A stretch of DNA of 64,000 bases from assembly GCA_026770705.1 (NCBI GenBank), contig JANJGN010000071.1, positions 2,232,001 through 2,296,000 of the forward strand, written 5' to 3'. Shown piece after piece: positions 1,476-36,240 of the stretch. Both the position numbers and the translations under genes were made by a program. A model generated the notes under the pieces. It saw nothing but the letters and a program-made list of their open reading frames with translations, was not told the origin of the DNA and searched no databases. How positions within the stretch are numbered: position 1 is the stretch's first letter; every line of letters begins with the position of its first letter. Source of the DNA: Isurus oxyrinchus. Lineage: Eukaryota.

Positions 1476-1862
1476 TTGGACTGTCACAAGAGTGGAAAGG
1501 TGACACTCCACGAGAGGTGACAGCGCAGGAAGGTTCGTGTGTACAGATTCCATGTCATTACAGTTATCCAGCACTTCTAGTAGGGAGAGCACGTGTTGGA
1601 ATCTGGTATGTGAAATGGTACACATGGAATACATGGAATACAAGGTCTAGAGGGACCATAGCATTTCACTCCAAGGATCACAGTCACGAGTTACCACGGT
1701 TCCACCATCGGACCCGGCTGTCTGGAGACCTGAAAGATGGCGGCTGTTCCCTGATTATAAACAACATCAGACGGGAAGATGAAGGATATTATTATTTCAG
1801 AATAGAATTTGACAATGGTCCGAGCCATAACTATTACCCTGTAACCCAGCTTCAGGTTTCTG
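1476..1862 (+). CDS. Siglec-like gene A, V-set Ig exon 1 (V1)
   Basis: AG acceptor ends at 1475, GTAAGT donor at 1863; 387 nt, phase 1-1. GSCVQIPC...GIW...LSGDLKDGGCSLII...EDEGYYYFRIE. Siglec hallmarks: B- and E-strand Cys, extra pre-B Cys, no F-strand Cys, essential F-strand Arg. Confidence 0.93.
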
Positions 1863-2089
1863 GTAAGTGCTGTGTTATAATTACTCAACAATTCACATCC
1901 AACACTCAATGGGAAATAATAGTGTTTGATTTGCTTGTTTTTTGGCCGTGTTAACCAGCGTCACTATTTTTAATGATTTGTCTATTTCTGCTCCCAGATC
2001 CATGAGCTTATTGTGTGTGATTGAATCCACATCATAGCTGTAACGTAAACTGAGCGGAGGGGTGATGACACCTCCCCCCTGAGTGAAGT

Positions 2090-3492
2090 GTCTCCTCCCC
2101 ACTACACCTTCCACCCCTCACACTGTCCGTGTAAACCCCCGTCCCATCTCCAGCCTCTCTTTCCCCTCCAAAGTCATTGAACGTGTTTCCATCTCCCGAA
2201 TCTGTTCCCATCTTTCCCGGAACTCCATGTTTGAATCCCTCCAATCAGGTTCCCACCCCAGCCACTGTGCTGAAACAGCTCTTATCAAGGTCACAAATGG
2301 CATCCTGTGTGACTGTGACAAAGGTCAACTTTCCCTCCTTGTCCTTCTCGATCTGTCTGCAGCCTTTGACATGCTCGACCACACCATCCTCCTCCAACAC
2401 CTCTCCACTGTCGTCCTGCTGGGTGGGACTGCTCTCCCCTGGCTCCATTCTTATCCATCTCATCGTAGCCAGAGAATCACTTGCAATGGCTTTGCAGCAT
2501 CATCTGAACAGTGTTAGTTTTCACCTGTCCACTGAGGATCCCCAGCTCTACCTCACCACCACCTCTCTCGACTCCTCCACTGCTGCTAAATTATCAGGCT
2601 GCTTATCCGACATCCAGTACTGGATGGGCAGAAATTCCCTCCAATTAAATATTGGAAAGACTGAAGCCATTGTCTTCATTCCCCGCTCCAAACTCTGTTC
2701 CCTCGCTACCAACTCCATTCCTCTCCCTGGCAGCTCTCTGAGATTGAAGCCAATCTGTTCACAGCTTTGTTGTCCCATTTGATCCTGAGATGAGCTTCCG
2801 GCCTCATATCTGCGCCCTCACTAACACCGTCTATTTCCACCTCCGTAACATCGCAAGACTTCACCCTGTCTCAGCTCATCTGCTGCTGAAACCCTCATCC
2901 ACGCCTTCATTACCTCCAGACTCGACTGTTCCAACACACGCTCTACACTCCATAAACTTGAGGCCATCCAAAACTGCTGACCACGTCCTTACTCACACCA
3001 AGTCCCATTCCCTTATCACCCGCTCTGCTCGATGACCGAGACTGGCTCCTGGTCAAGCAAAGTCTCAATGTCCAAATTTTCATCTTTGTTTCCTCACTAT
3101 CTCTGTAATCTCCTCGTCCTCCTCCAGTACCTACAACCATCCCATTCTCTGTAACCTCTTCAAGCCTCTGCTGCTTCTCTATATCTGTAAATTCATCCTG
3201 CACAACAAACCTACCAATCTCTGCAACCTCCTCCAGCCACTACAAACCTCTCTATCTCTGCAAACTCCTCCATACCCTACACTCTCCCAATCTCTCTTAA
3301 ATTTTCCAGCCCCTACAACCCTCCCTATCTCTGTAACCTCCTCCAGCCCCTCCAACCCTCTGAGGTCTCTGTGCTCATCCAATTCCAGCCTCTTGACCAT
3401 CCCCCGGTCCCATCACTCCAACATCGGCGGCCGTGCCTTCAGCTGCCTGGGGCCCGAGCTCTGTAATACCCTCCCTCAACCCCTCTCTGTCC

Positions 3493-3526
<34 letters not shown>

Positions 3527-3720
3527 ATCTCTATCTCTCTCTCTCTCACTATCCATTTCATCCCTCTTTGAAGATTCTCCATAACACCGACCTCTTCTGG
3601 CCAGCTGTCGCTAATATCTCCACATGTGTCTGGGTGACATACTTTGTTTTATGACGCTCCTGTGTAGCACCTTGGGGTGATTTGTCATGTTAAAGTTGTT
3701 GTGTAAATATAAGTTGTTGC
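2090..3720 (+). mobile_element. L2-clade LINE fragment (RT + 3' tail, with internal 37-bp minisatellite)
   Basis: RPISSLSFPSKVIER...QSG...ETALIKVTN...LLDLSAAFD..DHTILL; frameshifted. Confidence 0.85.
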
Positions 3721-4264
3721 CCTTTGACCCTCAACCCCAGCTTGAGTCTTATTTTTGAGGGAATGTACAACCTCCTTAGATTTCTGACCAAAATGTCATT
3801 TGATTATTTTTATTGAGCGAATGCCAAGCCCCGATACCGAGTGAGAGCCTCCTCATTTGCGGAGTTTAAGGTGATGAGTCAGCACCTTAGTCCGTAGAGG
3901 GGATTCTCCTCGGTAATGTGCAGCCTTGTTTGTGTCTCTCCACAAGCGCATGAGGGGTTTGTACAGAGGCTGCAGTGCTGGAGGGGGTCTGCACAGGGGT
4001 CCTGGCCTGTCCTGAGCCGGTTTTAGCAAGGACCACTCTGGCCTTGGCAGCTGAAAGCAAGCCATTGGACAGACGGGGCCTGTCACAAGGAGCCTGTTAG
4101 TCACTCCCCACCGTGTCTCCTGTGCTCGGATCCAGACCATGTTGGCTGGTGGATCTGGCTCAGGATGGGTCCTCCCCATGGGACCCCCAGATGGAAGGTG
4201 GGTCGAGCGGGTCAGTCACTTGCATGTTTATTCTGCAGCTTTAATATTTTAAGAAGGTAAGATT

Positions 4265-5095
4265 GTAGGAACATAAGAAATAGGAACAGGAGCAGGCCAT
4301 TCGGCCCCTCGAGCCTGCTCTCACTGATCTGGTTGTGGCCTTAACTCCATTTTCCTGCCTGTCTCCCAAACCCTTGACTCCCTTGTCGATCAAAAACCTG
4401 CCTCACTCAGCCTTGAGTCTATTCAATGGCCCAGCCTCCACTGCTCTCTGGGGAAGAGAATTCCACAGGCTAGCGCCCCTCTGAGAGAGGAAATTCCTCC
4501 TCATCTCAGTCTTAAATGGGAGAGCCCTCATTCCGAAACTGTGCTCCCTGGTTCTAGATTCCCCCACGAGGGGGAAACATCCTCCCAGCATCCACCCTGT
4601 CAAGTCCCCTCGGAATCGGATATGTTTCAGTAAGGTCACCCCTCATTCTTCTAAACTCCAATGGATACAGGCCCAACCTGCTCAACATTTCCTCACGGGA
4701 CAAACCCTTTAATCCCAGGAATCAGCCCAGTGAACTTCCTCTGAACTGCCTCCAATGCAGTGTCTATCCCTCCCTAAGTAAGGAGACCAGAACTGTACAC
4801 ACTGCTCCTGATACAATCTCACCCTGTGCAGCTGTTGCAAGACTTCCCTCCTTTTATACTCCATCCCTTTGCAATAAAGGCCAACATTCCACTTGCCTTC
4901 CTCATTCCGTGGTGTTCCTGAATGCTGACTTTCTGTGATTCATATACAAGGACACCCAGATCCCTCTGTACTGCATTCTGCAGCCTCTCTCCATTTAAAT
5001 AATATCCTGTTTTTCTATTCTTCCTGCCAAAATAATTTGTTGCAGTCCTCCTCAGTATTGACCATCCCCCCAATTCAGCCTCATCTGTAAATTTG
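4265..5095 (-). mobile_element. CR1 LINE 3' fragment (duplicate at ~19590-20430)
   Basis: Minus-strand YYLNGERLQ..QRDLGVLV...FKTEMRRNFLSQR...LWNSLPQ. Confidence 0.85.
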
Positions 5096-5150
5096 AGTCT
5101 GGTGGATCCACAAACCATCCAGAGTTAAATATTGAGATTTCTCTCCCCAG

Positions 5151-5519
5151 TTGAACCCTCACAAGAGTGGAAAGGTGACACTCCACGAGAGGTGACAGCG
5201 CAGGAAGGTTCGTGTGTACAGATTCCTTGTCATTACAGTTATCCATCGTGTCTGGAAAACCAACCGCGAGGTGGACTCTGGTTTAATAATGAGAAACAGA
5301 TTCCCTGGGCTCCCATTGCCTTTCACTCCAAGGATCACAGTCACGAGTTACCACGGTTCCACCATCGGACCCAGCTGTCTGGAAACCTGAAAGATGGCGA
5401 CTGTTCCCTGATTATAAACAACATCAGACGGGAAGATGCAGGACCTTATTTTTTCAGAATAGAATTTGACAATGGTCCGAGCCATAACTATTACCCTGTA
5501 ACCCAGCTTCACGTTTCTG
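5151..5519 (+). CDS. Siglec-like gene A, V-set Ig exon 2 (V2)
   Basis: CCCCAG acceptor, GTAAGT donor, 369 nt open, phase 1-1; GSCVQIPCHYSYPSCLEN...PYFFRIEF. Confidence 0.92.
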
Positions 5520-6333
5520 GTAAGTGCTGTGTTATAATTACTCTAACAATTCACATCCAACACTCAATGAGAAATAACGCAAACTGTGACGTTTACATAT
5601 TAACACAAAACACAGCTTATTATAGCACACTGTCTGATTCTCAATAACCTGGTGATAGCTCCCAGTTCAGTCCTAAAGCAATGTCTAATACTCACTTTAA
5701 TATCAATGATTAAATGTATTGACTGTGTCCATCAATGTTATCAGGTTATCCACTCCCATCGATCTCCCTAACCCTGTTTGACAGTCTTACATATCGACAA
5801 AAGAAAGATTCGCATTTCTATAGCGCCTTTCAACACCTCTGTACGTTGCAAATGGTTTCACAACCAATGAAATAATTCTTGAAATGTTGCCCTTGTTGTA
5901 ATATGGGACACACAGCAGCCAATTTATTCACAGGAAGCTCCCAGAAACAGCAATGTGATCAATAACCTGATCATCTGTTTTAGATGCCGGTTCAGTGATT
6001 GGTTCAAATGGATTCTCTCCTGCTGGGAACAGGATAGAATTTAAATCTGGCAGATTTCGGAGAAAGTAACAAGCCAGTGTGTCAGGAACTGTGAGCTGCT
6101 CCCCCACCCTCACCTGGGATTGTCAGTTCAATTGTCTCAAAGTGGAAGTGAATTCATCTGAGAGACAGAAAATCCACTAAGTCTGAAAATAGGAAATTCT
6201 CTCCTGATCATTGTAATCTCTCAGTTCTGATATCATCCTTGTAAAAGTGCTTTCTCTTGTGGGACTGTGGTTTCTATTTGAACTGATGCTTCACGTTATA
6301 TTTCTCTAAAAGGATCCATTCTCTGTCTGTTAG

Positions 6334-6626
6334 ATTTCACAGATAAACCCACGATATTCCCTGCTGAAATTATCGCAGGAAAGCGTGTGGATGTAAGCTG
6401 CACCTTCAACACAACGTGCAATGGAACAGCAGCACCTGTCTTAACCTGGGACACTCCCACTGACCTGGATCAGTCTCAAACACTGTAACTCAGCATGGTG
6501 TCACTCTGATCTATACTTCTGTTCTGACCCTGATCCCATCACTCAAACACCACGGACACACTCTCAGCTGCAGAGTGAGATATCCATCTGTTTCATCGGA
6601 GCGGACCCTTGTACTAACTGTACAAG
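6334..6626 (+). pseudogene. Gene A first C2-set exon with 4-bp frameshifting deletion
   Basis: 293 nt versus 297 nt in paralogue 21666-21962 (ACTGACCTGG vs ACTGACGTACCTGG); premature TAA at 6486-6488; splice sites intact. Confidence 0.85.
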
Positions 6627-6949
6627 GTAAGTACCGACACCTTTCATTCTACATCAGCACTCCCTCAGCGCTGACCCTCTGACAGTGCAGCCCGTTCTCA
6701 GTATCTACATTCTCAGACCTCTCAAAGTGCTTCACAGTCGATAGAAGTTAACTGATCTTTATTTGATTATTGCTGAATGAAGAGACAATCTGCCTAAACT
6801 TTACAGCTCGCACACATTATTTTCCATGGCAACACCGCCTCCAATCAGAGACCACTTGCCAATCAATCAGCACTCTCTTCCCATTAAATATAAATTGTTG
6901 TTCACTTCCTGTTGGGAAACCAGTGATCTGTCATGTTGAGTCCTGCCCT

Positions 6950-7102
6950 GACATCTGAATATCACAATGAACAGAACAAGTTCCAACAATGAGCTGTGGT
7001 TGGGGATTCCTCACGTTACATCCAGGGACACTGGAGACTATCAGTGTGTGGCAGAGAATGAACATGGAGCGTTGGAGGGTTTCATAACCATCACTGTGGA
7101 AC
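6950..7102 (+). pseudogene. Gene A remnant (3' half) of a second C2-set exon
   Basis: MNRTSSNNELWLGIPHVTSRDTGDYQCVAENEHGALEGFITITVE|GTGAGT nearly matches the 3' half of 26429-26710; 5' half and acceptor replaced by unrelated repeat-like sequence. Confidence 0.85.
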
Positions 7103-8220
7103 GTGAGTGTACACAGACTTCAACAGCTCTCTCAGATTCAAACACTACACAAACACATACAATTATACAAACCTAAATAGACACGTGCAGACACACAATC
7201 CCACATGTATGAGCACACAAAAGGACACACTCACAAACAAAGACACTAACAGATTCTCCCCCGTGGGTTACCTGACCTCCCTCAGTGCTGCACCGGAGAG
7301 TTGACATGGATTCTGGGAATTGTGTTCCCTTTCAAGTTTATGGAAGAACGCGGAAATTGCAAAGTCTATTAGACACCCAGATGCACAGAAATTCTCACAG
7401 ATACTCTCTGCCTCTCTAACTCTCTATCCTCCTTTAAAAAGCTTCCTGAAACCTAACCCTTTGACCAGTCACCTGTCCCAACTCCTCCTTATGTAATTCT
7501 GTGTGAAATGTTGTTTGAGTATCTGACAGTAAGAGAGAGATGGAGAGGTTTACGAAGAAATTTCTGTTGGTGAAAAGCTTACATCATGTTCTCACCTTTC
7601 CAGAGCCCATTTTGCACATGATGTCCAATGTCCAAGTTCATAATGGGGATTGCCTATGTAAACGTCACGCTGCAGTTACACTCTCCCACCAGTGGTGGCA
7701 CGGTAGCACTTAACCCTTGCATCTCCCAGCTTTTCAAGCAATTTCACTTCCCAATTTGCTACTATTCACCTCAACCACTCCCTGTGGGAGCGAGTTCCAC
7801 ATTCTCCCCTCTCTCTGGGTAAAGATTGGAACTGTTTATTAAGTGGGGGGTGTAAGTCCGTGAGGGAGTCCATCTCGATCCTGCCCGATTCACACACGCG
7901 TCCGAGATGGATTTCCACCCTGCACTAAACGTTTCCAGAATTTTCTACAGCACAATCCTGTACACAGCGATGGAGAGAAACATTGGACAGGGAGTCCAAC
8001 AGCACAATGATCCATTCTCACCAATGTTCCACGCTAAGGGGAAAGTTCCGATTGTCCACTCTTAGAGTGTTTACAATGAAAACATTCATTCCACATTGAA
8101 TCCCAGTGGATGGGTCAATATTACAGCAAATGTTGCAGTGATATGAAGCTTGATTGTTCAGCCAGAGTGAGAGATTGAAAGCGGAGAGTCAGTGATGATT
8201 TTTTTCTGTGTGTTCTCTAG

Positions 8221-8360
8221 ACAGTGGAGGAGAGATTCTGCACGTGATCCTGATCCTGGGAATACGAGCTGTGATATTCCTTGTGGCTGTGGTTATCACT
8301 ATCGCTGGAGTCTGTGTCTGGGAGAGACAAACAGTGAAAGGAAGTCGACAGACTGTTTAA
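8221..8360 (+). CDS. Gene A transmembrane exon with intramembrane Arg and short tail (activating-type receptor)
   Basis: Polypyrimidine tract + TAG acceptor at 8220. Read in phase 1: SGGEILHVILILGIRAVIFLVAVVITIAGVCVWERQTVKGSRQTV*. Arg codon 8265-8267, no Tyr motif. Not in the ORF track in this frame. Exon 3' end uncertain. Confidence 0.78.
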
Positions 8361-8384
8361 AGTTTTGTGCAGCAACAATTTCAT

Positions 8385-8985
8385 CATGGAACAGAAGAAC
8401 AGCATTTGGCCCATCGACTCCATGCTGTCTCTCTGTAGAGCAATCCACTCAGTCCCATTCCCCCTCTCTATCCCCGTATCTCTGCAAGTTTATTTCCCCT
8501 CAAGTGTCCATCCAATTTCCTTTTGAAATCGTTCATCGTCTCCGCTTCCACCATCCTCGTAGGCAGCGAGTTCCAGCTCATTACCACTCGCTGTGTAAAA
8601 AAGTTCCTCCTCACATCCCCCTCTGCCCAAAACCTTCAATCTGTGTCCCCCAGTCCTTGTACCATCAGCTAATGGCAACAGCTTCTCTTTGTCTACCTGA
8701 TCTAAACCCATCATCATCTTGTACACCTCGATCAGATCCCCCCTCAATCTCCTTTGCTCCAAGGAGAACAACCCCAGCTTCTCCAACCCAACCTTGTAGC
8801 TAAAATCCCTCATCCCTGGACCCATTCTGCTCAATCTCCTCCCCACCCTCTCAAGGACACTCACTTCCTTCCCAAAGTGAGGAGACCAGAACTGGACACA
8901 ATACTCTAGTTGTGACCTAACCAGAGCTTTATAAATGTTCAGCATAACCTCCCTGTGTTTGTACTCAGTCCCTCGATTTATGAAA
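8385..8985 (-). mobile_element. CR1 LINE 3' fragment
   Basis: YKALVRSQLEYCVQFWSP...LGLFSLEQRRLRGDLIEVYK. Confidence 0.88.
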
Positions 8986-9199
8986 AGCTTATTCTTTCCA
9001 TCAGCACAAACAACAATTTCCAAGCGGACTCCCATCAGCAGACAGAGTGCAATGAAACATCGGCATGCCTGCTTCTTAATGTACGGAGAGAAACCTGGAA
9101 CGAGAGATTCTCCTTCTCCTCAGCAAACTGAAACTTTTCCTTATACCTGGTGCTCCCCAGTCCTGCTGTGTGGACACATCATAACCACGGCATTGTCTG

Positions 9200-9344
9200 G
9201 CTGTGTGCAGCCAATATGGTCGAATAGGAATGAACAGAAATGTGACGTTGCTAAACTCTGTTCTCTGATTGGAATGTGCTTTCTGAATGCTGCACCTTTT
9301 TCATGCTGCGATAGATTGTAAGAAGCATTTGGCTTATGAATAAA
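9200..9344 (+). other. Probable gene A 3'UTR with AATAAA (9339-9344)
   Basis: Aligns by eye with the gene B tail-b 3'UTR at ~36268-36410 (TGTGTGCAGCCAAyATGG...TTCTGAATGCTGCACCTTTT...AGATTGT). Confidence 0.6.
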
Positions 9345-9699
9345 ATTACATTGATTAACTCAAGTGATTAAAATGCTCAGCCTGTTCTGTAGATATTTAT
9401 AGATTAAAATTCTTATTTAGCTGCCAAATGTTTGGCTCAGAGACATTACTTCATGTTGTCACATTTTCTCTATCATATGAATTCCTGTGCCCATCTTTAT
9501 AATCGAAATTTCCAATGTAAACATGTCACATTGTAGTTGCACACTCCTGCCAGTGGTGGTGCCATTCCAAAGCTGTCTTGCTGCACAGACACAGTGAGAA
9601 TTATTCTCGACGTCTACATGATGTTGTTGGGACACAGACATCAGACGGAACCTTGGGCAGTGCCTAGAATGCACTTAGGACAGTGCAGACCACACTCAG

Positions 9700-10785
9700 A
9701 ACTGACAGTGCAGCGTTTCCTCAGTGCTGACCCTCTGTCAGTGCAGCGCTCCCTCATTACTGTCCCTCTGACAGTGCTGCACTACCTCATTATTGACCCT
9801 TTTTAATTGCAGCACCCCGTCAGCACTGACCTTCTGACAGTGCAGCACTCCCTCAGTACTCACCCACCCACAGTGCAGCACTCCCTCAGTACTGATCCTC
9901 TGACACTGTATCCCTCCCTCACTACTGACCTTCCGACAGTTCAGCACTCCCATGGTACACACCTTCTGACAGTGCAGCACTTGCACAGTGCTGACAAACT
10001 GACAGTGCAGCATTCCCTCAGTACTGACCCTCTGACACTGTATCCCTCCCTCACTACTGACCTTCCGACAGTTCAGCACTCACTCAGTACTCACCCTCCC
10101 ACAGTGCAGCACTCCTTCAATTCTCACCTTCCCACAGTGCAGCCCTACCTCTGTACACACCCTCCCACAGTGCAGCCCTCCCTCAGTACTCACTCTCCCG
10201 AAGTGCAGCCCTCCCTCAGTACTCACCCTCCCACAGTGCAGCACTCCCTCAGTACTCACCCTCCCACAGTGCAGCACTCCCTCAGTACTCACCCTCCCAC
10301 AGTGCAGCACTCCCTCAGTACTCACCCTCCCACAGTGCTGTGCAAGTTGTTTCAATCAAGACTGGTGCCCAAAGAGGCAGGTTTCAATGCTAAATCATTG
10401 AAATCGTTGAAAATTATTTTTAGGCTTACGGGAACAAGACTTAGTTCCTCAAATCATTTCTTTGCAATAACACACAGTACAAGAATCTCTGTTTAAATAA
10501 ATTCCAGTTAAACTTTGCCATGAAAGGATATCTCCTCACACGTCTCTCTACCTCAGTACTAACCCTCCCACAGTCCGGCACACTCTCAATACTGACCCTC
10601 CAAATGTGCGGAACTCAGTCAGTACAGACCCGCCGACAGTTCAGCAATCCAACATTACTGACCCTCTGACAGTGCAGCACTCCCTCATTACTGACCCTCT
10701 GACAGTGCAGCACTCCATCATTACTGACCCTCTGATAGTGCAGCACTCCCTCAGTACAGTGCCGCTGACAGTGCAGCACTCCCTC
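9700..10785 (+). repeat. 33-bp minisatellite (CAGTGCAGCACTCCCTCAGTACTGACCCTCyGA), Deu-SINE-derived unit
   Basis: Tandem unit visible directly; same unit at ~32570-32880, 35700-35870, 44960-45280, 55120-55390, 57395-57625. Confidence 0.85.
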
Positions 10786-11590: not shown

Positions 11591-11630
11591 ATGATCGGGA
11601 AATCTTACTTCCTCCTGTCACTTCTCCAAG
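11591..11630 (+). CDS. Siglec-like gene B signal-peptide exon
   Basis: MIGKSYFLLSLLQ(G)|GTAATA, phase 1; acceptor TTTCAG at 11548; joins V1 in frame (VGLSQEW). Confidence 0.85.
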
Positions 11631-16911: not shown

Positions 16912-17289
16912 TTGGATTGTCACAAGAGTGGAAAGGTGACACTCCACGAGAGGTGACAGCGCAGGAAGGTTCGTGTGTACAGATTCCATGTCATTACAGT
17001 TATCCATCAGATTTGGTAAAGAAACCACAGGTCGGAATCTGGAAAATGAGAAGATACATACAGAACAAATGGTCTAAATGGTCTATAGCCTTTCACTCCA
17101 AGGGTCACAGTCGCGAGTTATCACAGTTCCACCATCGGACCCGGCTGTCTGGAGACCTGAAAGATGGCGACTGTTCCCTGATTATAAACAACATCAGACG
17201 GGAAGATGCAGGACCTTATTTTTTCACGATAAAATTTGGCAATGGTCCGAGCCATAACGTTTCCCCTGAAACCCAGCTTCACGTTTCTG
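16912..17289 (+). CDS. Gene B V-set exon 1 (essential Arg replaced by Thr)
   Basis: 378 nt open, AG/GTAAGT, phase 1-1; ...PYFFTIKFGNGPSHNVSPETQL. Confidence 0.92.
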
Positions 17290-20485: not shown

Positions 20486-20854
20486 CTGAACCCTCACAAG
20501 AGTGGAAAGGTGACACTCCACGAGAGGTGACAGCTCAGGAAGGATCGTGTGTACAGATTCCATGTCATTACAGTAATCCATCGTGTCTGGAAAACCAACC
20601 GCGAGGTGGAGTCTGGTTTAATAATGAGAAACAGATTCCCTGGGCTCCCATTGCCTTTCACTCCAAGGATCACAGTCACGAGTTACCACGGTTTCACCAT
20701 CGGACCCGGCTGTCTGGAGACCTGAAAGATGGCGACTGTTCCCTGATTATAAACAACATCAGACGGGAAAATGCAGGACCTTATTTTTTCAGAATAGAAT
20801 TTGACAATGGTCCGAGCCATAACTATTACCCTGTAACCCAGCTTCACGTTTCTG
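20486..20854 (+). CDS. Gene B V-set exon 2 (Arg retained)
   Basis: 369 nt open, AG/GTAAGT; ...PYFFRIEFDNGPSHNYYPV. Confidence 0.92.
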
Positions 20855-21665: not shown

Positions 21666-21962
21666 ATTTCACAGATAAACCCACGATATTCCCTGCTGAA
21701 ATTATTGCAGGAAAGCGTGTGGATGTAAGCTGCACCTTCAACACAACGTGCAATGGAACAGCAGCACCTGTCTTAACCTGGGACACTCCCACTGACGTAC
21801 CTGGATCCGTTTCAAACACTGTAACTCAGCATGGTGTCACTCTGACCTATACTTCTGTTCTGACCCTGATCCCATCACTCAAACACCACGGACACAATCT
21901 CAGCTGCAGAGTTAGATATCCATCCGTTTCATCGGAGCGGACCCTCGTATTAACTGTACAAG
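21666..21962 (+). CDS. Gene B C2-set exon 1 (Siglec domain-2 type)
   Basis: 297 nt; DFTDKPTIFPAEIIAGKRVDVSCTFNTTCNGTAAPVLTW...LSCRV; carries the BC-loop Cys used for the Siglec V-C2 interdomain disulfide. Confidence 0.92.
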
Positions 21963-25510: not shown

Positions 25511-26428
25511 AGTGGGGGGTGTTCGTGACCATCAGTGTGGAAGGGTTAGGTTTACAGGTTACACAGACCAGACACACACCAACAGACACACACACACATG
25601 TAAGCACGCACATTCACACGCACATGCTCACACACACAACACACACACGCACACACACACGCACACACACACACACACACACACGTAAGCACGCACANNN
25701 NNNNNNNNNNNNNNNNNNNNNNNNNNNNNNNNNNNNNNNNNNNNNNNNNNNNNNNNNNNNNNNNNNNNNNNNNNNNNNNNNNNNNNNNNNNNNNNNNNNN
25801 NNNNNNNNNNNNNNNNNNNNNNNNNNNNNNNNNNNNNNNNNNNNNNNNNNNNNNNNNNNNNNNNNNNNNNNNNNNNNNNNNNNNNNNNNNNNNNNNNNNN
25901 NNNNNNNNNNNNNNNNNNNNNNNNNNNNNNNNNNNNNNNNNNNNNNNNNNNNNNNNNNNNNNNNNTGTGCAGAAACGCAAACACACACACACACACGTGT
26001 GAGTTCCCTCTCCTCGCTCAGGGCTGCACTGGAGTCTCGGTGTCAGCTCCAATTCTGTGCTGAAGGAAGGTAAACTCCAGATCAGCAAGACCCTGAATTG
26101 GATGAGCAACCTCCTGAACAGAGAATGGTAGATTTACCCCTCAGTGCTCCATCGATCAAATACAATTCATTGCCTGTCAAGCCCTTGGGGACATCCTGAG
26201 GATGTGAAAGGCAGTTTCTTTAAATCTGGATGGACAGGGTCTCTGGTGGGAGAATGCTCCTGCAGTGTGACAGTTTACATAGGCAGTGCCCATTGTAAAT
26301 GTGACATAGGAACTTATCTTGAGAGAAGGTGCCTAGAAATGCACACAGGCATCAGTTACAGCGAGATGATACAGGAAGTTTTGCTGTGCACTGTGTTTGC
26401 TCACATTAAAATCTTTATATATTTTTAG

Positions 26429-26710
26429 ATGGACCACAGAATCTCTCAATTAATTCTCTTGATATGATTAACGCTTCATCGGTCAATATAATTGAGGGGA
26501 ATTCTGCAGTGATAATCTGCTCTGTCGAGAGCTTCCCAGCTTCTAACCTGACGTGGCGACATCTTAATGTCCCAATGAACAGAACAAGTTCCAACAATGA
26601 GCTGTGGTTGGTGATTCCTCACGTTACATCCAGGGACACTGGAGACTATCAGTGTGTGGCAGAGAATGAACATGGAGCAGTGGAGGGATTCATAACCATC
26701 ACTGTGGAAT
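26429..26710 (+). CDS. Gene B C2-set exon 2
   Basis: 282 nt, TTTTAG/GTGAGT; DGPQNLS...EGNSAVIICSVESFPASNLTW...DTGDYQCVAENEHG. Confidence 0.92.
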
Positions 26711-26769
26711 GTGAGTGTGGAGATACATTTGTTTGTTTGTTGTCTCCGTGGTCTCCGTGGAGCCATTGG

Positions 26770-28586: not shown

Positions 28587-28862
28587 ATCCCCCACAGGAG
28601 ACGATGGTGTCCATCAGCAGATCCTCAGGTGGGATAAGAGAGGGAAGCAATATCACATTAACCTGCTCCAGTGAAAGTGTCCCACCGATATCTCATTACA
28701 CCTGGTTCAGGATCGAGGGGAACACCAGCACCCAGTTAAACACAAGTAGCCGCACTCTCTCCTTCACTCCTGTAACACGGGAGAATGATGCAGGTTTCTA
28801 CTGCACAGCGAGGAACCCAATGGGTAACAGCACCTCCAACATCACCCACCTGAACGTACAAT
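28587..28862 (+). CDS. Gene B C2-set exon 3
   Basis: 276 nt, TTCCAG/GTAAGC; YPPQETMVSI...EGSNITLTCSSESVPPISHYTWF...DAGFYCTARNPMG (CD22/sialoadhesin-type repeat). Confidence 0.92.
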
Positions 28863-28989: not shown

Positions 28990-29825
28990 ATACATAAGGA
29001 GATATCAGAACAGGGACTGAAAGCTCAGAGAAAGAGGCCAGATTTTAAGGAGTGTCTGAAATGAGGAGAGAGATAGACATGGAGAGGTTTACGGTGGGAA
29101 TTCTAGAGCTCGGGGCCCAGGCAGCTGAAGGCACGGCCGCCAATGGTGGAGCGATAGGAATCGGGGGATGGTCAAGAGGCCGGAATTGGAGGAACGCAGA
29201 GACCTCGGAGGGATGTAGATGCTGGAGGAGGTTACAGAGATAGGGAGGGTTGTGGGGTCTGGAGGAGGTTACAGAGATAGGGAGGGTTGTGATGGCTGGA
29301 GGAGGTAACAGAGATAGGGAGGGTTATAGGGGCTGGAGGAGGTAACAGAGATAGGGAGGGTTGTGATGGCTGGAGGAGGTAACAGAGATAGGGAGGGTTA
29401 TAGGGGCTGGAGGAGGTAACAGAGATAGGGAGGGTTGTAGATGCTGGAGGAGGTAACAGAGATAGGGAGGGTTGTGGGGTCTGGAGGAGGTTACAGAGAT
29501 AGGGAGGGTTGAAGGGGCTGGAGGAGGTTACAGAGATAGGGAGGGTTGTAGATGCTGGAGGAGGTAACAGAGATAGGGAGGGAGTAAGGAGGAATTTGAA
29601 ACGATGTAAATTTTAAAATTGTGGCATTGTCGGACCGGGAGCCAGTGTAGCTCAGTGACCAACAGGGAGTGATGTGTGAACGGGACTCGGTGTGAGTTAG
29701 GACATGGGGACAGCAGAGTTTGGGATGAGCTGATGTTTCCGGAGAGTGGAAGATGGGAGGTCAGGCAGGAGAGTGTTGGGATAGTCGAGTGCGGAGGTAA
29801 CAAAGGCAGGAATGAGTGTTTCAGT
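28990..29825 (-). mobile_element. L2 LINE 3' fragment with 37-bp minisatellite (29215-29585)
   Basis: Reverse complement of the 3060-3480 type sequence. Confidence 0.75.
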
Positions 29826-29892: not shown

Positions 29893-30186
29893 ATAAGCCG
29901 GAGATTTCCCAGCAGTCGGAGTGCACTCGGAGGTCAGAGGGGGTCACCTGCGTCTGTGTGGCCAACTCCAACCCACCCGGAGACCTCACCTGGCACCTGC
30001 CCAGTGCCAACATCAGTGGTAACCAAAAAAACGGAGGTTTTGTGTCGTGGCAGGTCAGAGATGGGCATCTGGTGACTGGTTCCCTCACCCTGATGAGACC
30101 CCAGGATGAGGGGGGAGTGATGGCATCCTGCTCGGTTCAAAACCCACACGGGGAAGCCATGTTCAAGATGTATCTGTGGGTCAAAG
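29893..30186 (+). CDS. Gene B membrane-proximal C2-set exon 4
   Basis: 294 nt; YKPEISQQSECTRRSEGVTCVCVANSNPPGDLTW...SCSVQNPHG; C-x8-CxC pattern of MAG domain 5 and the last domain of Siglec-5/10/11. Confidence 0.9.
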
Positions 30187-31070: not shown

Positions 31071-31167
31071 GTAGAGACTCCAGTAAATGGACAGTAGGAT
31101 TGTTCACGGCTGGGATCATGTTGAGTGTTTTCCTGGCTGGAATCTTCATCTTCATCTGTGTGAGAAA
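31071..31167 (+). CDS. Gene B transmembrane exon (uncharged)
   Basis: TTACAG/GTAAGT, 97 nt, phase 1-2; GRDSSKWTVGLFTAGIMLSVFLAGIFIFICVRK. Confidence 0.9.
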
Positions 31168-31890
31168 GTAAGTCTGAAGATTTAACTTGATTTTAATATA
31201 AACATTTGTTTAGGATTAATTGGACAGTTTTTACAAAGGGCCAGCACAGGCACGATGGGCTGAGTGGCTTCCTCCCGAGCTGTGAGATTTTAAATTCTTT
31301 CATCGAATGTGACTGTCACTGGCGTGGCCAATACTAATTGCCCATTCCCTAAATGCCCCTTGAGAATGAGGTGGTGAGCTGCCTTCTTGACCCGCTGCAG
31401 TCCATGTGGTGTAGGTACACCCACAGTGCTGTTAGAGAGGGAGCTCCAGGATTTTGACCCAGCGACAGTGAAGGAACGGTGATATATTTCCAAGTCAGGA
31501 TGGTGAGTGACTTGGAGGGGAACTTCCAGGTGGTGGTGTTCCCATGTGTCTGCTGCCCTTGTCCTTCTAGATGGTAGAGGTCGTGGGTTTGGAAGGTGCT
31601 GTTGAAGGAGCCTTGCTGAGTTGCTGCAGTGCATCTTGTATATGTTACACACACTGCTGCCACTGTGTGTTCGTTGTGGAGGGAGTGAATGTTTAATGTG
31701 GTGGATGGGGTGTAGATCAATCGAGCTGCTTTGTCCTGGATGGTGTCGAGATTCTAGATTCTGTGCTTTGTGCAGAAGTGATTTAAAGAGACAGTCCAGT
31801 CATTGGTGTAAGGTTACAGTGGGCTCTGTGTCTGTGCTGCACTGACTCTTTGCTATGTGATAACCACAGTGTGATATTGTGTTATTGCAG

Positions 31891-31972
31891 GAGAAAGACA
31901 GCGATGGAGGAGAGAGTTTCAGGGACCAGTGACATTGCATTGACCCCCAGTTCACTCTCTGTGAAGCACCAG
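31891..31972 (+). CDS. Gene B cytoplasmic exon 1a
   Basis: TTGCAG/GTACAG, 82 nt, phase 2-0; RKTAMEERVSGTSDIALTPSSLSVKHQ. Confidence 0.85.
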
Positions 31973-33024
31973 GTACAGGAGCTGTTTACACTCACTCCAA
32001 AGCTTCAATCTCAGTGTGTAGACAACACATGTCCCAGATTCCCTGCCCAGTTACCCACTGATTTGTACCTGTGGAGTCAGCAATGGTTCAGTATCATGCT
32101 GTCTCTCTGTTATGACACAGCAACTGGTAAAGGCTGTTGTTTAAAAACCCAGAGGGAAACTTTAAACAACTGTCATAACCTATACTTCCCAGTGGAATGT
32201 TTGAGATGCATCTCTAAATTCAGGAATAAGACCACCAGTTCTGGAGATGGGTTTATATCAAACTAAATGAGACATATATTAATTTACACAAGTTAAACAT
32301 ATGCACATGGTTACAAACTAGTATTATCATAACTTTTTAACAAATTCTCAAACTAATCTCCTCTAAGACAACCCATAGTCTTTAAGCAGATTCCAGGCAT
32401 TTTCACCTCACAAGTTCCAGTTTCTCTCTCTATCTCAACCTCCCTTTCTTTCTCTCTCTTTCTCTCTCTCTCATCCTCTCTCTGATTACAAGGTGCATGT
32501 TAATGAGCTTCACACCAGAAACTTGAGTGAAGAATCCAAGCCGTCACTCACCAGAGCCATTACCGAGGGAGTGCGAGACTGACAGCGGGTCAGTACTGAG
32601 GGAGTGCTGTACTGTTGGAGGGTCAGTACTGAGGGAGAGTTGCACCGTCGGAGGGTCAGTACTGAGGAAGCGCTGTACTGTCGGAGGGTCAGTACTGAGG
32701 GAGCGCTGCACCATCGGAGGGTCAGTACTGAGGGAGCGCTGCACTGTCAGAGGGTCAGTACTGAGGTTTTTGCTGCGCTGTCGGAGGGTCAGTACTGAGG
32801 GAGTGCGAGACTGACAGAGGGTCACTATTGAGGATGTGCTGCACTGTTGGAGGGTCAGTCCTGAGGGAGCACTGCACTGCCATAGGTGGTTTCTTTCATA
32901 AGACATGGGAGAGAGAGTTAAACCCACTGAGACACGACTGACATTAACGAAGCTGCACAATAATTTAACCCTATCAGTGCCAGTAAATGATGTGAGGATG
33001 TCTTCTGTTTCCATTTCTCTGTAG

Positions 33025-33273
33025 GGTAAACAGAACGTGCTGATTACTGAGCCCCGGAACACAACCAGAGACACAACTAGCGAGGGGGAGACCCCAACTC
33101 CCCGGGGTCTCTCTGAAGGTGCAGTGGGAGGCGATGCTGGACTTGGGAACCCCGGCAAACCTGAAGAGTTTCTCTACGCCAATCCCCAAGTTTTGAGGGT
33201 GTCCAGTGGTGATGGGTCTGTCCACAGGGAAGAGGAGACGGAATACGCACAGATCAGGTTTGAGCATAACTGA
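33025..33273 (+). CDS. Gene B terminal cytoplasmic exon 2a (degenerate ITIM FLYANP + ITSM TEYAQI)
   Basis: CTGTAG acceptor, 249 nt to TGA; AATAAA at 33798-33803. Confidence 0.85.
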   Translation, partial: GKQNVLITEPRNTTRDTTSEGETPTPRGLSEGAVGGDAGLGNPGKPEEFLYANPQVLRVSSGDGSVHREEETEYAQIRFEHN

Positions 33274-34420
33274 ATGAGAAATGGGGACTGGGAGTGAGGA
33301 GGAGTGGGCGTGGGGGTAGGGATTGAGATTCCTGGGAACAGGAAACAACCCACTGGGGGAGAGGGGGAGAGAGGGAGGAAGGGATGGAATTGGGCTACGG
33401 TTGGTGTGGTTTGGAATGAAATGCTTCTCCAGAGAGGACTGGATGCTGAGCCATTGGGGAGTGAGATTCACTGTCTCTCTCTCTCTCTCTCTCTTCCTCT
33501 CTGTCTCTCTCTTTCTTTCTGTGTCAGTCTCTCATTCTCTCTCTCTTGCTCCTCCTTTAAGATGACCGTTAATGACTGACTTTGATGACTCAGCTGTTGG
33601 TCTCCTGTCCCTAATATCTCCTCATGTGCCTCAGAGTCAGGTGAAATGTGACTAACAATCCCCGGATGAGCCTTGGGACATTTTGCTACATTGAAGGTGC
33701 TATATAAATGCAAGTTGTTGCAGTAACTCTGATCTGCTTCTATTAACAATGGAACCACAGAGGTTCCTTCGACAGGGCGTGTGTGCAGCAGGGTCACAAT
33801 AAATACATTGAGCTGTGAGATTTTTCATTCTTACATCGAATGTGGCTGTCACTGGTGATGTCCGCATTGATGCCAATCTCTAACTGCCCTTGAGAAGGTG
33901 GTGGTGAGCTGCCTTCTTGACCCGCTACAGTGCATGTGGTGTAGGTACACCCACAGTGCTGTTAGAGAGGGAATTCCTGGATTTTGACCCAGCGACAGTG
34001 AAGGAACGGTGATATATTTCCAAGTCAGGATGGTGAGTGACTTGGAGGGGAACTTCCAGGTGGTGGTGTTCCCATGTGTCTGCTGTCCTTGTCCTTCTAG
34101 ATGGTAGAGGTCGCGTATTTGGAAGGTGCTGTTGAAGGAGCCTTGCTGAGTTGCTGCAGTGCATCTTGTAGATGGTACACACACTGCTGCCACTGTGTGT
34201 TCATGGTGGAGGGAGTGAATGTTTAATGTGGTGGATGTGGTATGGATCAATCGGGCTGCTTTGTCCTGGATGGTGTCGAGCGTCTTGATTCTGTGCTTTG
34301 TGCAGAGGTGATTTAAAGAGAGAGTCCAGTCATTGGTGTAAGGTTACAGTGGGCTCTGTGTCTGTGCTGCACTGACTCTCTGCTATATGATAACCACAGT
34401 GTGATATTTTGTGATTGCAG

Positions 34421-34502
34421 GAGAAAGACAGCGATGGAGGAGAGAGTTTCAGGGACCAGTGACATTGCATTGACCCCCAGTCCACTCCCTGTGAAACACC
34501 AG
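34421..34502 (+). CDS. Duplicated cytoplasmic exon 1b
   Basis: Near-identical to 31891-31972 with the same phases; RKTAMEERVSGTSDIALTPSPLPVKHQ. Confidence 0.8.
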
Positions 34503-35991
34503 GTACAGGAGCTGTTTACACTCACTCCAAAGCTTCAATCTCAGTGTGTAGACATCATATGTCCCAGATTCCCAGCCCAGTTACCCACTGATTTGTACCT
34601 GTGGAGTCAGCAATGGTTCAGTATCATGCTGTCTCTCTGTTATGACACAGCAACTGGTAAAGGCTGTTGTTTAAAATCCCAGAGGGAAACTTTAAACAAC
34701 TGTCGTAACCTATATTTCCCAGTGAAATGTTTGAGATGCAGCTCTAAATTCAGGAATAAGACCACCAGTTCTCAAGATGATTTTATATCAATCTAAATGA
34801 GACATTTATTAATTTTCACAAGTTAAACATATGCACATGGCTACAAACTAGTATTATCATAACTTTATAACAAATTTTCAAACTTATCTCCTCCAAGACA
34901 ACCCATAGACTTTAAGCAGACACCAGGCAAAGCATTTTCACCTCACAAATTCCAAATGAGGCTCCTTTCACTTTGGTTCCTTTGCAGACAAGTGTAGGAT
35001 TACAGCTGCTTTGCTGTTACAAGCCTCTGCTCTGCACACACAAAACTGCACAAGTTATACCCAGCTCTTGAGTGTGAAGAAGATGGAGATTGATGGGCTC
35101 TTGATTGGTAAAGGGATCAATGGTTAGGAGAGAAGGTGGGAGAATGGGGTTTGTGAAACATATCAGCCATGTATGAATGGTGGAGCAGACTCGATGGACC
35201 GAATGGTCTAATTTCTCCTCCTATGTCTTATGGTCTTATGGCTTCTGTTTGAAGGTAAATTCGCAATGTATCATCAGGACCTTTGAACTCCATCTCTTCC
35301 AATCCCCTTTCATCGTATCAATTTTATTAGTAATATAAACGTTGATTGGTTTAAGATTTCAATCTCAGACTTTGAATGTTTTATTTAAAAATACAAATTA
35401 CCACTTTACCTCTTTGTTTACATCTCAAAACTACTATACATCAAAGCACACAGACTGGCTGTCTTTAATCCAATTTAAATACACACAGACACACACACAG
35501 ACTAAACCTCTGTTTAAAAAGACAGTTTGCATTTATAATACAAACATTAATAGATTAATAACACTCTGTCTCTATCCCTCCTCTATCTCTCTCTCTCATC
35601 CTCTCTCTGATTACAAGGTTCATGTTATTGATCCTCACACCAGGCACCTGAGTGCAGAATCCAAGCCGTCACTCACCAGAGCCATTACCGGGGGAGTGGG
35701 GGACTGACAGCGGGTCAGTACTGAAGGAGTGCTGCACTGTCGGAGGGTCAGTACTGAGGGAGTGCTGCACTGACAGAGGGTCAGTACTGAGGGAGCGCTG
35801 TATTGTCGGAGGGTCAGCACTGAGGGAGTGCTGCACTGTTGGAGGGTCAGTACTGAGGGAGTGCTGCACTGCCATAGGTGGTGCCTTTTATCCGATAGGA
35901 GAGAGAGAATTAAACAAGTCTGCACAATAATTTAACCCTATCAGTACCAGTAAATGATGTGAGGATGTCTTCTGTTTCCATTTCTCTGTAG

Positions 35992-36240
35992 GATGAACAG
36001 AACGTGCTGATTACTGAGCCCCGGAACACAACCAGAGACACAACTAGTGAGGGGGAGACCCCAGCTCCCCGGGATCTCTCTGAAGGTCCAGTGGGAGGCG
36101 ATGTTGGACATGGGAACTCAGACAAACCTCACGAGCTTCTCTACGCCAACATCAACTTTTCAAAGCTGCCCGGCGGTGACAGGACTGTGCACAGGAGCGA
36201 GGACACGGAATACGCACAGATCAGGTTCCAGAAAAACTGA
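35992..36240 (+). CDS. Duplicated terminal cytoplasmic exon 2b (ITIM LLYANI + ITSM TEYAQI)
   Basis: CTGTAG acceptor, 249 nt to TGA; ITIM/ITSM pair as in CD33-related Siglec tails. Confidence 0.85.
   Translation, partial: DEQNVLITEPRNTTRDTTSEGETPAPRDLSEGPVGGDVGHGNSDKPHELLYANINFSKLPGGDRTVHRSEDTEYAQIRFQKN

What the first reader, a model, noticed from the sequence alone, without database searches (positions are those of the whole stretch)
1476..36240. Paired activating/inhibitory double-V Siglecs in a probable cartilaginous fish
Seen: genes A and B share a recently duplicated V1-V2-C2 block but end differently. A has a TM with an embedded Arg (ILHVILILGIRAVIFLVAVVITIAGVCVW) and a tyrosine-free stub; B has an uncharged TM plus ITIM/ITSM tails. 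Known: this is the layout of mammalian paired Siglecs (Siglec-5/14, -11/16), where a basic TM residue recruits an ITAM adaptor (DAP12; FcR-gamma for Arg-type receptors such as LILRA). Inference: an independently evolved or very ancient paired-Siglec system, possibly countering pathogen sialic-acid mimicry.
Basis: partly seen in the sequence, partly recalled or inferred. Interest (0 to 1): 0.88.

Follow-up and report, generated by a model that had tools for sequence, protein, structure and literature searches.

The report
Shark paired activating/inhibitory Siglec-like genes
Two neighbouring shark immune-receptor genes of the Siglec type share nearly the same outer (binding) part, but one ends in a membrane anchor with a buried arginine ('act' type) and the other in inhibitory tyrosine motifs ('hold back' type); RNA data show the 'act' ending is really spliced on, although this assembly's copy carries a 4-letter deletion that breaks its reading frame.

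Summary
Gene A (V1 1476-1862, V2 5151-5519, C2 6334-6626, Arg-TM exon 8221-8360) and gene B (leader 11591-11630, V1, V2, C2, three more Ig exons, uncharged TM, two alternative tails) share a duplicated block that is 91.5% and 95.9% identical, then diverge. The V exons are Siglec-type: the best solved relatives are Siglec-5, MAG and CD33.

In three RNA-like public runs, contigs join 6626 to 8221 (GT..AG). The DNA run does not. So the Arg-TM exon is spliced to the Siglec C2 exon.

The Arg-TM tail, with its core VILILGIRA, also ends RefSeq models of Scyliorhinus torazame and Chiloscyllium punctatum.

Corrections:
- In the window, A's C2 exon lacks 4 bases (ACGT) and is frameshifted. All four runs carry those bases.
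- The V1 exons are only 75% identical in protein, and B's V1 has lost the sialic-acid arginine.
- Tail 1 has no ITIM.
- A's 5' end lies outside the window.
- The assembly gap lies in a (CA)n repeat inside an intron of B.

Adaptor coupling, sialic-acid binding and pathogen pressure remain untested. The scan has already reported this family on other pieces of this genome.

The parts
1476..1862 (+). Gene A, V-set exon V1 (phase 1-1). It keeps the Siglec Arg (YYYFRIEF). Gene A's leader exon lies upstream of the window.
   Evidence: Acceptor and donor; Pfam V-set and Ig_CD22.
5151..5519 (+). Gene A, V-set exon V2 (YFFRIEF), 97.3% nt identical to B's V2.
   Evidence: V-end to V-start joints appear in RNA-like contigs (table 5c).
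6334..6626 (+). Gene A, C2-set exon. A 4-base deletion after 6462 relative to B shifts the frame in this assembly.
   Evidence: ACGT is present at this place in all four runs (table 4).
6950..7110 (+). Remnant of the 3' half of an Ig3-type exon inside A's C2-to-TM intron. It has no acceptor.
   Evidence: 95% identical to 26558-26718. Contigs on it run on upstream into ESFPASNLTW coding letters that the window lacks there (table 7).
8221..8360 (+). Gene A, last coding exon: stalk, TM with Arg (codon at 8265-8267), 12-residue Tyr-free tail, stop at 8358-8360. The 3' UTR runs on past 9400.
   Evidence: Joint 6626|8221 in X9, X10 and X17. Conserved in P0006, P0158 and P0022.
11591..11630 (+). Gene B, leader exon (MIGKSYFLLSLLQ, donor GTAATA).
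   Evidence: It matches the N-termini of P0002, P0005 and P0013.
16912..17289 (+). Gene B, V1 exon. The Siglec Arg is replaced (YFFTIKF). 75% aa identity to A's V1.
20486..20854 (+). Gene B, V2 exon (YFFRIEF).
   Evidence: PDB best hits are Siglec-5, MAG and CD33 at E about 1e-13.
21666..21962 (+). Gene B, C2-set exon (intact, 99 codons).
   Evidence: It aligns to domain 2 of MAG, CD33, Siglec-10 and Siglec-5.
25698..25965 (.). Assembly gap inside B's intron, flanked by (CA)n.
26429..26710 (+). Gene B, Ig3 exon (ESFPASNLTW type).
28587..28862 (+). Gene B, Ig4 exon.
29893..30186 (+). Gene B, Ig5 exon (ANSNPPGDLTW type). Pfam gave no hit for it.
   Evidence: tblastn to P0013 residues 516-611; borders.
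31071..31167 (+). Gene B, uncharged TM exon (ends in phase 2).
31891..31972 (+). Gene B, cytoplasmic exon, module 1.
33025..33273 (+). Tail exon 1: FLYANP (not an ITIM) plus TEYAQI (ITSM pattern), then stop.
   Evidence: Like the tail of the Carcharodon model P0012.
34421..34502 (+). Cytoplasmic exon, module 2. It is a 93% copy of module 1 and has no TM exon of its own.
35992..36240 (+). Tail exon 2: LLYANI (ITIM) plus TEYAQI (ITSM pattern), then stop.
   Evidence: Like the tail of the Cetorhinus model P0002.

Best explanation
A and B are two tandem genes of a shark family of Siglec-type receptors with stacked V domains.

- **Gene B** is the inhibitory form: leader, V1, V2, C2, three more Ig domains, a plain membrane anchor, and a tail with the ITIM plus ITSM pattern of CD33-related Siglecs. 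That tail would recruit SH2 phosphatases (inferred).
- **Gene A** is the activating-type form. Its V2 and C2 exons have been kept or made nearly identical to B's by recent duplication or gene conversion. Its C2 exon is spliced directly to a different, old last exon. That exon encodes a membrane helix with a buried arginine and a 12-residue tail without tyrosine.
- By the general rule for modular immune receptors, such an arginine pairs with the aspartates of a dimeric ITAM adaptor such as FcR-gamma, CD3-zeta, DAP12 or DAP10. Which adaptor is not readable from the sequence.

Shown here: the anatomy, the C2-to-Arg-TM splice in RNA-like contigs, and conservation of the cassette in sharks.

Inferred: adaptor coupling, sialic-acid binding, opposite signalling.

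In this assembly A carries a 4-base deletion in C2. This particular copy may be a null allele, or the deletion may be an assembly error.
For: - **Duplication map:**
- **Exon borders and phases:**
- **Siglec-type V and C2 domains:** Pfam V-set, Ig_CD22 and C2-set_2. PDB best hits are Siglec-5, MAG, CD33, Siglec-8 and Siglec-7, with YFFR aligned. C2 aligns to domain 2 of MAG, CD33 and Siglec-10.
- **Splice:** the joint 6626|8221 has GT..AG ends in X9, X10 and X17 and is absent from DNA run X1. In those three runs intron bins 7165-7617 have no depth.
- **Stacked V domains:** V-end to V-start joints and the V-end to C2 junction also appear.
- **Arg-TM tail elsewhere:** it ends XP_072326180 and XP_072326181 (S. 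torazame) and XP_072409577 (C. punctatum), with VILILGIRA invariant.
- **Inhibitory tails elsewhere:** the same tail type occurs in many shark RefSeq models.
- **No decay in C2:** codons after the deletion show dN/dS 0.12.
- **Assembly rule for a basic TM residue and adaptor aspartates:** PMC13107469. Arg-type macaque KIR use FcR-gamma: PMC8102735.
Against: - The window's A copy is frameshifted in C2.
- The RNA-like contigs differ from the window at about 1-2% of letters. In V2 and C2 they are a mosaic of A-type and B-type letters. They may come from another allele, a sister species or a very close paralogue of a large family, not from this exact locus.
- The runs are only guessed to be RNA, and contigs cannot link V1 or V2 to the TM exon in one molecule.
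- V1 of A and B are 25% different in protein. dN/dS is 1.1, and dS (0.125) is far above the 3' flank divergence of 2.2%. The outermost domains therefore have separate histories.
- No adaptor, ligand or signalling test was possible.
Confidence: 0.7

Rival explanations
1. In this genome gene A is a dead or dying copy. The 4-base deletion is real, the Ig3 exon is half deleted and a LINE fragment sits in the 3' UTR. On this view the transcripts seen come from an intact allele or paralogue elsewhere.
For: - The frameshift and early stop are.
- The deleted letters are not in a homopolymer, which is unusual for an assembly error.
- The half-exon remnant is at 6950-7110.
- One contig (X17) lacks 8378-8999, so that segment is an insertion in the window's form.
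- Scan notes describe a large family with many copies.
Against: - All four runs, DNA and RNA-like, carry ACGT on a background nearer to A than to B.
- The C2 codons behind the deletion show no decay, with dN/dS 0.12.
- V1, V2 and the TM exon are open with intact splice sites.
- The DNA contig over 8183-8358 differs from the window at one intron letter only.
- The half exon has no acceptor and is simply skipped.
Confidence: 0.3
2. The genes are Siglec-like in fold, but A and B do not form a functional pair on one ligand. The outer V1 domains have diverged or been replaced, so the two receptors see different things, possibly not sialic acid at all.
For: - V1 is 75% identical in protein.
- B's V1 has Thr for the key Arg, plus changes in the following strand.
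- V1 dS is 0.125 against 2.2% divergence in the 3' flank, which points to a separate origin of the V1 exon.
Against: - V2 (96% aa) and C2 are nearly the same in both genes.
- V2 keeps YFFR and all the Siglec cysteines in both genes.
- Human Siglec-12 also has two V domains (own knowledge).
Confidence: 0.25
3. A and B are two haplotypes or a collapsed and expanded mis-assembly of one gene.
For: The blocks are 92-96% identical, and there is an assembly gap in B.
Against: - The V1 exons differ by 12%.
- A has its own unique 3' exon that is spliced in RNA-like contigs.
- B's leader exon (11591-11630) lies between A's last exon and B's V1.
- A carries a 4-kb deletion relative to B.
- At single places both letter types occur in one run (5199 in X9, 5294 in X1).
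Confidence: 0.03

Closest known systems
Human paired Siglecs (Siglec-5/Siglec-14, Siglec-11/Siglec-16)
   Same: - Linked genes.
- Near-identical outer Ig domains, kept alike by duplication or gene conversion.
- One member has ITIM and ITIM-like tail motifs. The other has a basic residue in the membrane helix and a short tail (PMC4042635 and PMC13358205).
   Different: - Here the near-identity covers the second V domain and C2, not the outermost domain.
- There are two or more stacked V domains.
- The activating end is a separate cassette found only in shark models so far.
- The adaptor is unknown.
- The host is a cartilaginous fish.
CD33-related Siglecs (inhibitory type)
   Same: - V domain with the YFFR arginine and the three-cysteine pattern.
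- A following C2 domain with an extra cysteine.
- A tail with LxYAxI/L...TEY(A/S)(Q/E)I, about 23 residues apart. This tail is also present in ray, turtle and mammal models found here.
   Different: - The locus lies beside hepcidin. In human that is the MAG/CD22 neighbourhood, not the CD33 cluster (own knowledge for human; hepcidin shown).
- The V domain is equally close to MAG and to Siglec-5 or CD33.
- Published work states that fish genomes lack CD33-related Siglecs (PMC7226832, teleosts only).
Human Siglec-12 (two V-set domains)
   Same: Two V-set domains in tandem ahead of the C2 domains. RefSeq names several of the shark models 'Siglec-12' for that reason.
   Different: Shark models have two to six V domains (P0001, P0003, P0158). 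The names are automatic and are not evidence of orthology.
Arg-type activating Ig receptors that use FcR-gamma (LILRA, Fc-alpha-RI/CD89, macaque activating KIR)
   Same: A single arginine in the outer-to-middle part of the membrane helix, followed by a very short tail (PMC13107469, PMC8102735).
   Different: - In CD89 and LILRA the arginine sits within the first turn, after a polar Q/N.
- Here it is residue 11 of a 29-residue hydrophobic run, with no Asn before it.
- Association was not tested.

Membership tests
Siglec (I-type lectin) family | N-terminal V-set Ig domain of Siglec sequence type | tested here: met
   Pfam V-set and Ig_CD22 for all four V exons. PDB top hits are all Siglecs, E 1.8e-13 to 1e-9.
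Siglec (I-type lectin) family | Conserved arginine on strand F that binds the sialic-acid carboxylate | tested here: met
   YFFR or YYFR in A V1, A V2 and B V2, aligned to Siglec-5 YFFRVE. Not met in B V1 (YFFTIKF).
Siglec (I-type lectin) family | Three cysteines in the V domain and an extra cysteine in the following C2 domain (intrasheet and interdomain disulfides) | tested here: met
   Sequence pattern only: SCVQIPC...DCSLII in V, and SCTFNTTC...LSCRV in C2. The bonds themselves are not shown.
Siglec (I-type lectin) family | Binding of sialylated glycans | not testable with these tools
   Needs protein and glycan arrays.
CD33-related Siglec subgroup | Membrane-proximal ITIM plus distal ITIM-like or ITSM motif in the tail | tested here: met
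   Tail 2 has LLYANI and TEYAQI. Tail 1 has only TEYAQI.
CD33-related Siglec subgroup | Groups with CD33-related Siglecs rather than MAG, CD22, Siglec-1 or Siglec-15 | tested here: inconclusive
   E-values: Siglec-5 1.8e-13, MAG 3.2e-13, CD33 7e-13. No tree was built. The neighbour is hepcidin.
Paired activating/inhibitory receptors | Closely linked genes with highly similar ligand-binding domains | tested here: inconclusive
   A ends at 8360 and B starts at 11591. V2 is 96% aa and C2 about 97% nt identical, but the outermost V1 is only 75% aa identical.
Paired activating/inhibitory receptors | One member has an ITIM tail. The other has a charged TM residue and a short tail without signalling motifs. 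| tested here: met
Paired activating/inhibitory receptors | The activating member is made as mRNA with the charged-TM exon joined to the ectodomain exons | tested here: met
   Joint 6626|8221 in three RNA-like runs from two samples and two studies. The source may be an allele or a near-identical copy.
Paired activating/inhibitory receptors | The activating member associates with an ITAM adaptor through the TM charge | not testable with these tools
   No shark adaptor sequence could be brought in. Needs co-expression and co-IP.

The most novel reading that the evidence does not exclude
CD33-related-type Siglecs, complete with an activating Arg-TM partner, already existed in the common ancestor of jawed vertebrates, at the hepcidin/MAG/CD22 locus. 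On this reading teleosts lost them, and the mammalian CD33 cluster is a relocated descendant. The paired-Siglec principle would then be about 450 million years old, not a mammalian invention.
Probability: 0.25. Interest if true: 0.75.

Novelty: new variant of a known kind. Interest (0 to 1): 0.58.

Why it matters
- Paired Siglecs are so far a mammalian story, used as a textbook case of host-pathogen arms races over sialic-acid mimicry.
- The one fish study found here states that fish genomes lack CD33-related Siglecs (PMC7226832). That study covered teleosts only.
- A shark locus with an ITIM/ITSM Siglec next to an expressed Arg-TM partner that shares its inner V and C2 domains has two possible meanings. 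Either the principle is far older than mammals, or it arose again independently.
- It also gives a concrete, clonable pair for testing which adaptor chains cartilaginous fish use.
- RefSeq already holds automatic models of such proteins in several sharks. Six literature searches found no paper on them.

Tried and rejected
- **First C-terminal search:** a word-based search with the 52-residue C-terminus found only two proteins.
- **Wider search:** it gave 59 family members, but no Arg-TM form beyond the three already known. No Arg-TM model turned up for Carcharodon or Cetorhinus. These were partial, length-limited searches, so this is not evidence that none is annotated, nor of absence from those genomes.
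- **Pfam on short exons:** nothing for the TM or tail exons, as expected for short segments.
- **Other TM copies:** no second copy of the Arg-TM exon in the window, and no uncharged-TM or ITIM exon between 8360 and 11591.
- **Haplotype mis-assembly:** rejected on structure.
- **High contig depth at 6863-7164:** it is not a hidden exon of A. It is B-type mRNA laid on a half-exon remnant.
- **GC-skew flip at the gap:** explained by satellite arrays that lie in opposite orientation on the two sides. It is not an inversion of the exons.
- **Spliced model:** every search was done exon by exon, by reference.
- **Gap letters:** none were filled or looked up.
- **Literature:** no paper on shark Siglecs was found.

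Full report
**What is there**

The window is vertebrate DNA. Its closest proteins are RefSeq models from lamniform and other sharks: Cetorhinus, Carcharodon, Scyliorhinus, Mustelus, Stegostoma and Chiloscyllium. They carry automatic names such as Siglec-8, -10, -12, -13, -14, CD33-like and MAG-like.

A self-comparison shows two duplicated blocks. Block 3-3360 equals 15457-18789 at 91.5%. Block 4185-6658 equals 19514-21994 at 95.9%. After that the copies have nothing in common. A third duplication lies inside gene B: 31277-32419 equals 33810-34954 at 93%, with the tail exons at 82-89%.

**Exons**

All four V exons have a polypyrimidine-AG acceptor and a G|GTAAGT donor, and are phase 1-1.

| Exon | Gene A | Gene B |
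|---|---|---|
| Leader | outside the window | 11591-11630 |
| V1 | 1476-1862 | 16912-17289 |
| V2 | 5151-5519 | 20486-20854 |
| C2 | 6334-6626 | 21666-21962 |
| Ig3 | half-exon remnant 6950-7110 | 26429-26710 |
| Ig4 | none | 28587-28862 |
| Ig5 | none | 29893-30186 |
| TM | 8221-8360 (Arg, with stop) | 31071-31167 (uncharged) |
| Cytoplasmic | none | 31891-31972, copy 34421-34502 |
| Tail | none | 33025-33273 and 35992-36240 |

B's leader reads MIGKSYFLLSLLQ with donor GTAATA. It joins in frame to V1 exactly as in the shark models. Gene A's leader must therefore lie before the window's first base. The finding's gene A is cut at its 5' end.

**Family**

- Each V exon hits Pfam V-set and Ig_CD22. 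The first C2 exon hits C2-set_2.
- Against solved structures, V2 of B finds only Siglecs at the top: Siglec-5 at 1.8e-13, MAG at 3.2e-13, CD33 at 7e-13, then Siglec-8, -7, -10, sialoadhesin and Siglec-15. Its YFFRIE aligns to the YFFRVE of Siglec-5.
- The C2 exon aligns to domain 2 of MAG, CD33, Siglec-10 and Siglec-5.
- The V exons carry the three-cysteine Siglec pattern, and the C2 exon carries the extra cysteine.
- A V1, A V2 and B V2 keep the arginine. B V1 has threonine (YFFTIKF).

**The two ends**

The exon at 8221 follows an AG at 8219-8220. In phase 1 it reads SGGEILHVILILGIRAVIFLVAVVITIAGVCVWERQTVKGSRQTV, then stop. The arginine codon is CGA at 8265. The arginine is residue 11 of a 29-residue hydrophobic run. 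No tyrosine follows.

B's TM reads WTVGLFTAGIMLSVFLAGIFIFICV and is uncharged. It shows no evident similarity to A's TM on reading the two side by side (no alignment of the pair was run), so the two ends look like different cassettes rather than point-mutated versions of one.

Tail 2 has LLYANI (ITIM pattern) and TEYAQI (ITSM pattern). Tail 1 has FLYANP, which is not an ITIM, plus TEYAQI. The second cytoplasmic and tail module has no TM exon of its own. It can only be an alternative end of B, and this was not tested with RNA.

**RNA evidence**

I laid Logan contigs of three runs guessed to be RNA (X9 and X10 from one sample, X17 from another study) and one DNA run (X1) on 4900-9400. All four carry the same coded organism label.

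- **C2-to-TM splice.** All three RNA-like runs hold a contig that joins 6626 to 8221, skipping 1594 bases with GT..AG ends. The DNA run has none. In the RNA-like runs the intron bins 7165-7617 have no depth. The X17 contig is 850 bases long. It covers the C2 exon, the TM exon, and 3' UTR as far as 9391.
- **V-to-C2 and V-to-V junctions.** Contigs that begin at the C2 exon are preceded by TTCACGTTTCT, the 3' end of a V exon. Two go-back joints link a V exon end (5519) to a V exon start. One has a V2-type first letter. The other carries the V1-type letters TTGGACTG. Stacked V domains therefore exist in mRNA. Some transcripts place a V exon ahead of a V1-type exon, so A may have further V exons upstream of the window.
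- **Limits.** The RNA label is a guess. Contigs do not link V1 or V2 to the TM exon in one molecule. Contigs differ from the window at roughly 1-2% of letters.

**The frameshift**

A's C2 exon lacks ACGT after 6462 compared with B. The frame then runs into a stop.

All four runs carry ACGT there (table 4). Those contigs are not B. They have B-type letters at 6374 and 6510. With only 2 to 4 other letters in all, they must keep A-type letters at most of the remaining seven diagnostic places, 6472 and 6475 among them. The RNA-like ones of X10 and X17 run straight on into A's TM exon. The DNA contig over 8183-8358 differs from the window at one intron letter only.

Behind the deletion, A's codons are still conservative, with dN/dS 0.12. 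The deletion is therefore either very young and private to the assembled haplotype, or an assembly error. I cannot tell which. Scan notes say the family is large in this genome, so a near-identical paralogue as the source of the contigs cannot be excluded.

**How alike are the binding parts?**

| Region | A versus B |
|---|---|
| V2 exon | 97.3% nt, 95.9% aa, dN/dS 0.34 |
| C2 exon | about 97% nt |
| V1 exon | 88% nt, 75% aa, dN 0.141, dS 0.125, ratio 1.1 |
| 1 kb after V1 | 97.8% nt |
| 1 kb before V1 | 91.6% nt |

The similarity is a mosaic. A young tract runs from just behind V1 through V2 and C2. An older, or separately acquired, segment covers V1 and the sequence upstream of it. The pair is 'paired' through V2 and C2, not through the outermost domain.

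**History of A**

Between C2 and the TM exon, A keeps the 3' half of an Ig3-type exon. Bases 6950-7110 equal 26558-26718 at 95%, donor included, but there is no acceptor and no 5' half. Compared with B, about 4 kb are missing there.

In the Scyliorhinus and Chiloscyllium models the Arg-TM exon follows Ig3-type or C2 domains directly. A is therefore best read as a member of an old activating lineage. Its 5' part was exchanged with its neighbour, and it then lost the Ig3 exon by deletion.

The homology between A and B breaks at 6658. From about 6655 the contigs show short go-back joints and depth rises about forty-fold, which looks like a short tandem repeat.

**Conservation**

The Arg-TM tail ends three predicted proteins:
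- XP_072326180 of S. torazame
- XP_072326181 of S. torazame
- XP_072409577 of C. punctatum

VILILGIRA is invariant in all three, and the stop sits at the same place in one of them. Together with the window, which is probably lamniform, that makes three galeomorph orders.

The inhibitory tail type LLYANINF...TEYAQIRF is widespread in sharks. Similar motifs end models from a ray, a turtle and a mammal.

**The gap**

The gap at 25698-25965 is flanked by (CA)n on both sides. It lies in B's intron between C2 and Ig3. Order and strand of the exons across it match the Stegostoma (P0013) and Mustelus (P0005) models. Stegostoma has two Ig3-type domains, so one more exon could hide in the gap. Frame is not affected. 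Continuity is not proven. No gap letters were filled or looked up.

**Mechanism**

By the established rule, a single basic residue in the helix of a tail-less receptor docks onto the paired aspartates of a dimeric signalling module (PMC13107469). Arg-type receptors such as macaque activating KIR and CD89 use FcR-gamma (PMC8102735, PMC13107469). NKG2D uses a central Arg with DAP10.

Here the Arg lies between the 'top' and 'centre' positions, so the adaptor is open. B's tail would recruit SH2 phosphatases. Both steps are inference.

**Context**

A Pfam-supported hepcidin exon lies at 58059-58208 (31.3 bits). A further Siglec-like V exon lies at 47783-48190, with sialoadhesin and MAG as best hits. 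In human, hepcidin sits beside MAG and CD22 (own knowledge). The cluster may therefore mark the old MAG/CD22 neighbourhood. The V domain itself cannot be assigned to MAG or to the CD33 group.

**Literature**

Six searches found no paper on shark Siglecs. A study of teleosts states that fish genomes lack CD33-related Siglecs (PMC7226832).

The scan itself has already reported and followed up this family, and the Arg-TM cassette, on other pieces of the same genome. Those notes were used as leads only.

**Method notes**

All searches were made exon by exon, by reference.

Noticed in passing
window 47783-48190 (+): A further Siglec-like V-set exon (GWSMKALPQRAISSSCVVIPCSFDFP...) lies between gene B and hepcidin. 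Its best solved relatives are sialoadhesin (1.2e-10) and MAG (1.9e-9). It is only 25-34% identical to the A and B V exons. It may be the V exon of a conserved Siglec (MAG, Siglec-1 or CD22 type).
   Followed up: partly
window 58059-58208 (+): This exon encodes a furin site and a cysteine-rich peptide (CRFCCNCCNWREPNETCGLCCRY). It hits Pfam Hepcidin at 31.3 bits against a cut-off of 27. Hepcidin beside Siglec genes recalls the human HAMP-MAG-CD22 neighbourhood.
   Followed up: partly
window 8378-8999: One RNA-like contig (X17) joins 8377 to 9000 with non-splice ends (AT..CC), while X9 covers the segment. The segment holds a LINE-type reverse-transcriptase fragment on the minus strand (ORF 8490-9035). 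It looks like an insertion polymorphism in A's 3' UTR.
   Followed up: no
window 5151-5519 (table 5c): A contig of X9 joins a V exon end to a V1-type exon start (TTGGACTG). Some transcripts therefore carry a V exon ahead of V1. Either A has more V exons upstream of the window, or the contig comes from a paralogue with three or more V domains, as in models P0001 and P0158.
   Followed up: no
window 9700-10790, 32558-32886 (reverse), 44959-45288, 55115-55392, 57394-57632; also 3092-3500, 18519-19517, 29207-29582 (reverse), 54165-55066: Two families of repeat arrays recur through the locus, in opposite orientation on the two sides of the gap. Their unit lengths were not measured. This explains the change of GC-skew sign at about 26 kb. 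One array starts where A-B homology ends (about 6655).
   Followed up: partly
window 11569-11628: The first 20 residues of the Carcharodon model XP_041037179 (MKYLGVDNDREILLPPVTSP) match the window at 100%, but in a different frame from the real leader (ATG at 11591). That RefSeq model probably starts at the wrong ATG. The window's species is Carcharodon or a close relative.
   Followed up: no
proteins P0169-P0175, P0188, P0201, P0204 and others: Many family members in sharks carry a second kind of tail: D(D/N)LYANC(D/N)F...(S/A)VYGN(V/I/L). It differs from the ITIM/ITSM tail of gene B, and its signalling meaning is unknown.
   Followed up: no
window 5228-5251 and 20563-20586: V2 of both genes has a fourth cysteine (PSCLENQ) that V1 lacks. 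Another scan note proposes a V1-V2 disulfide. I only saw that the residue is present in both copies.
   Followed up: no
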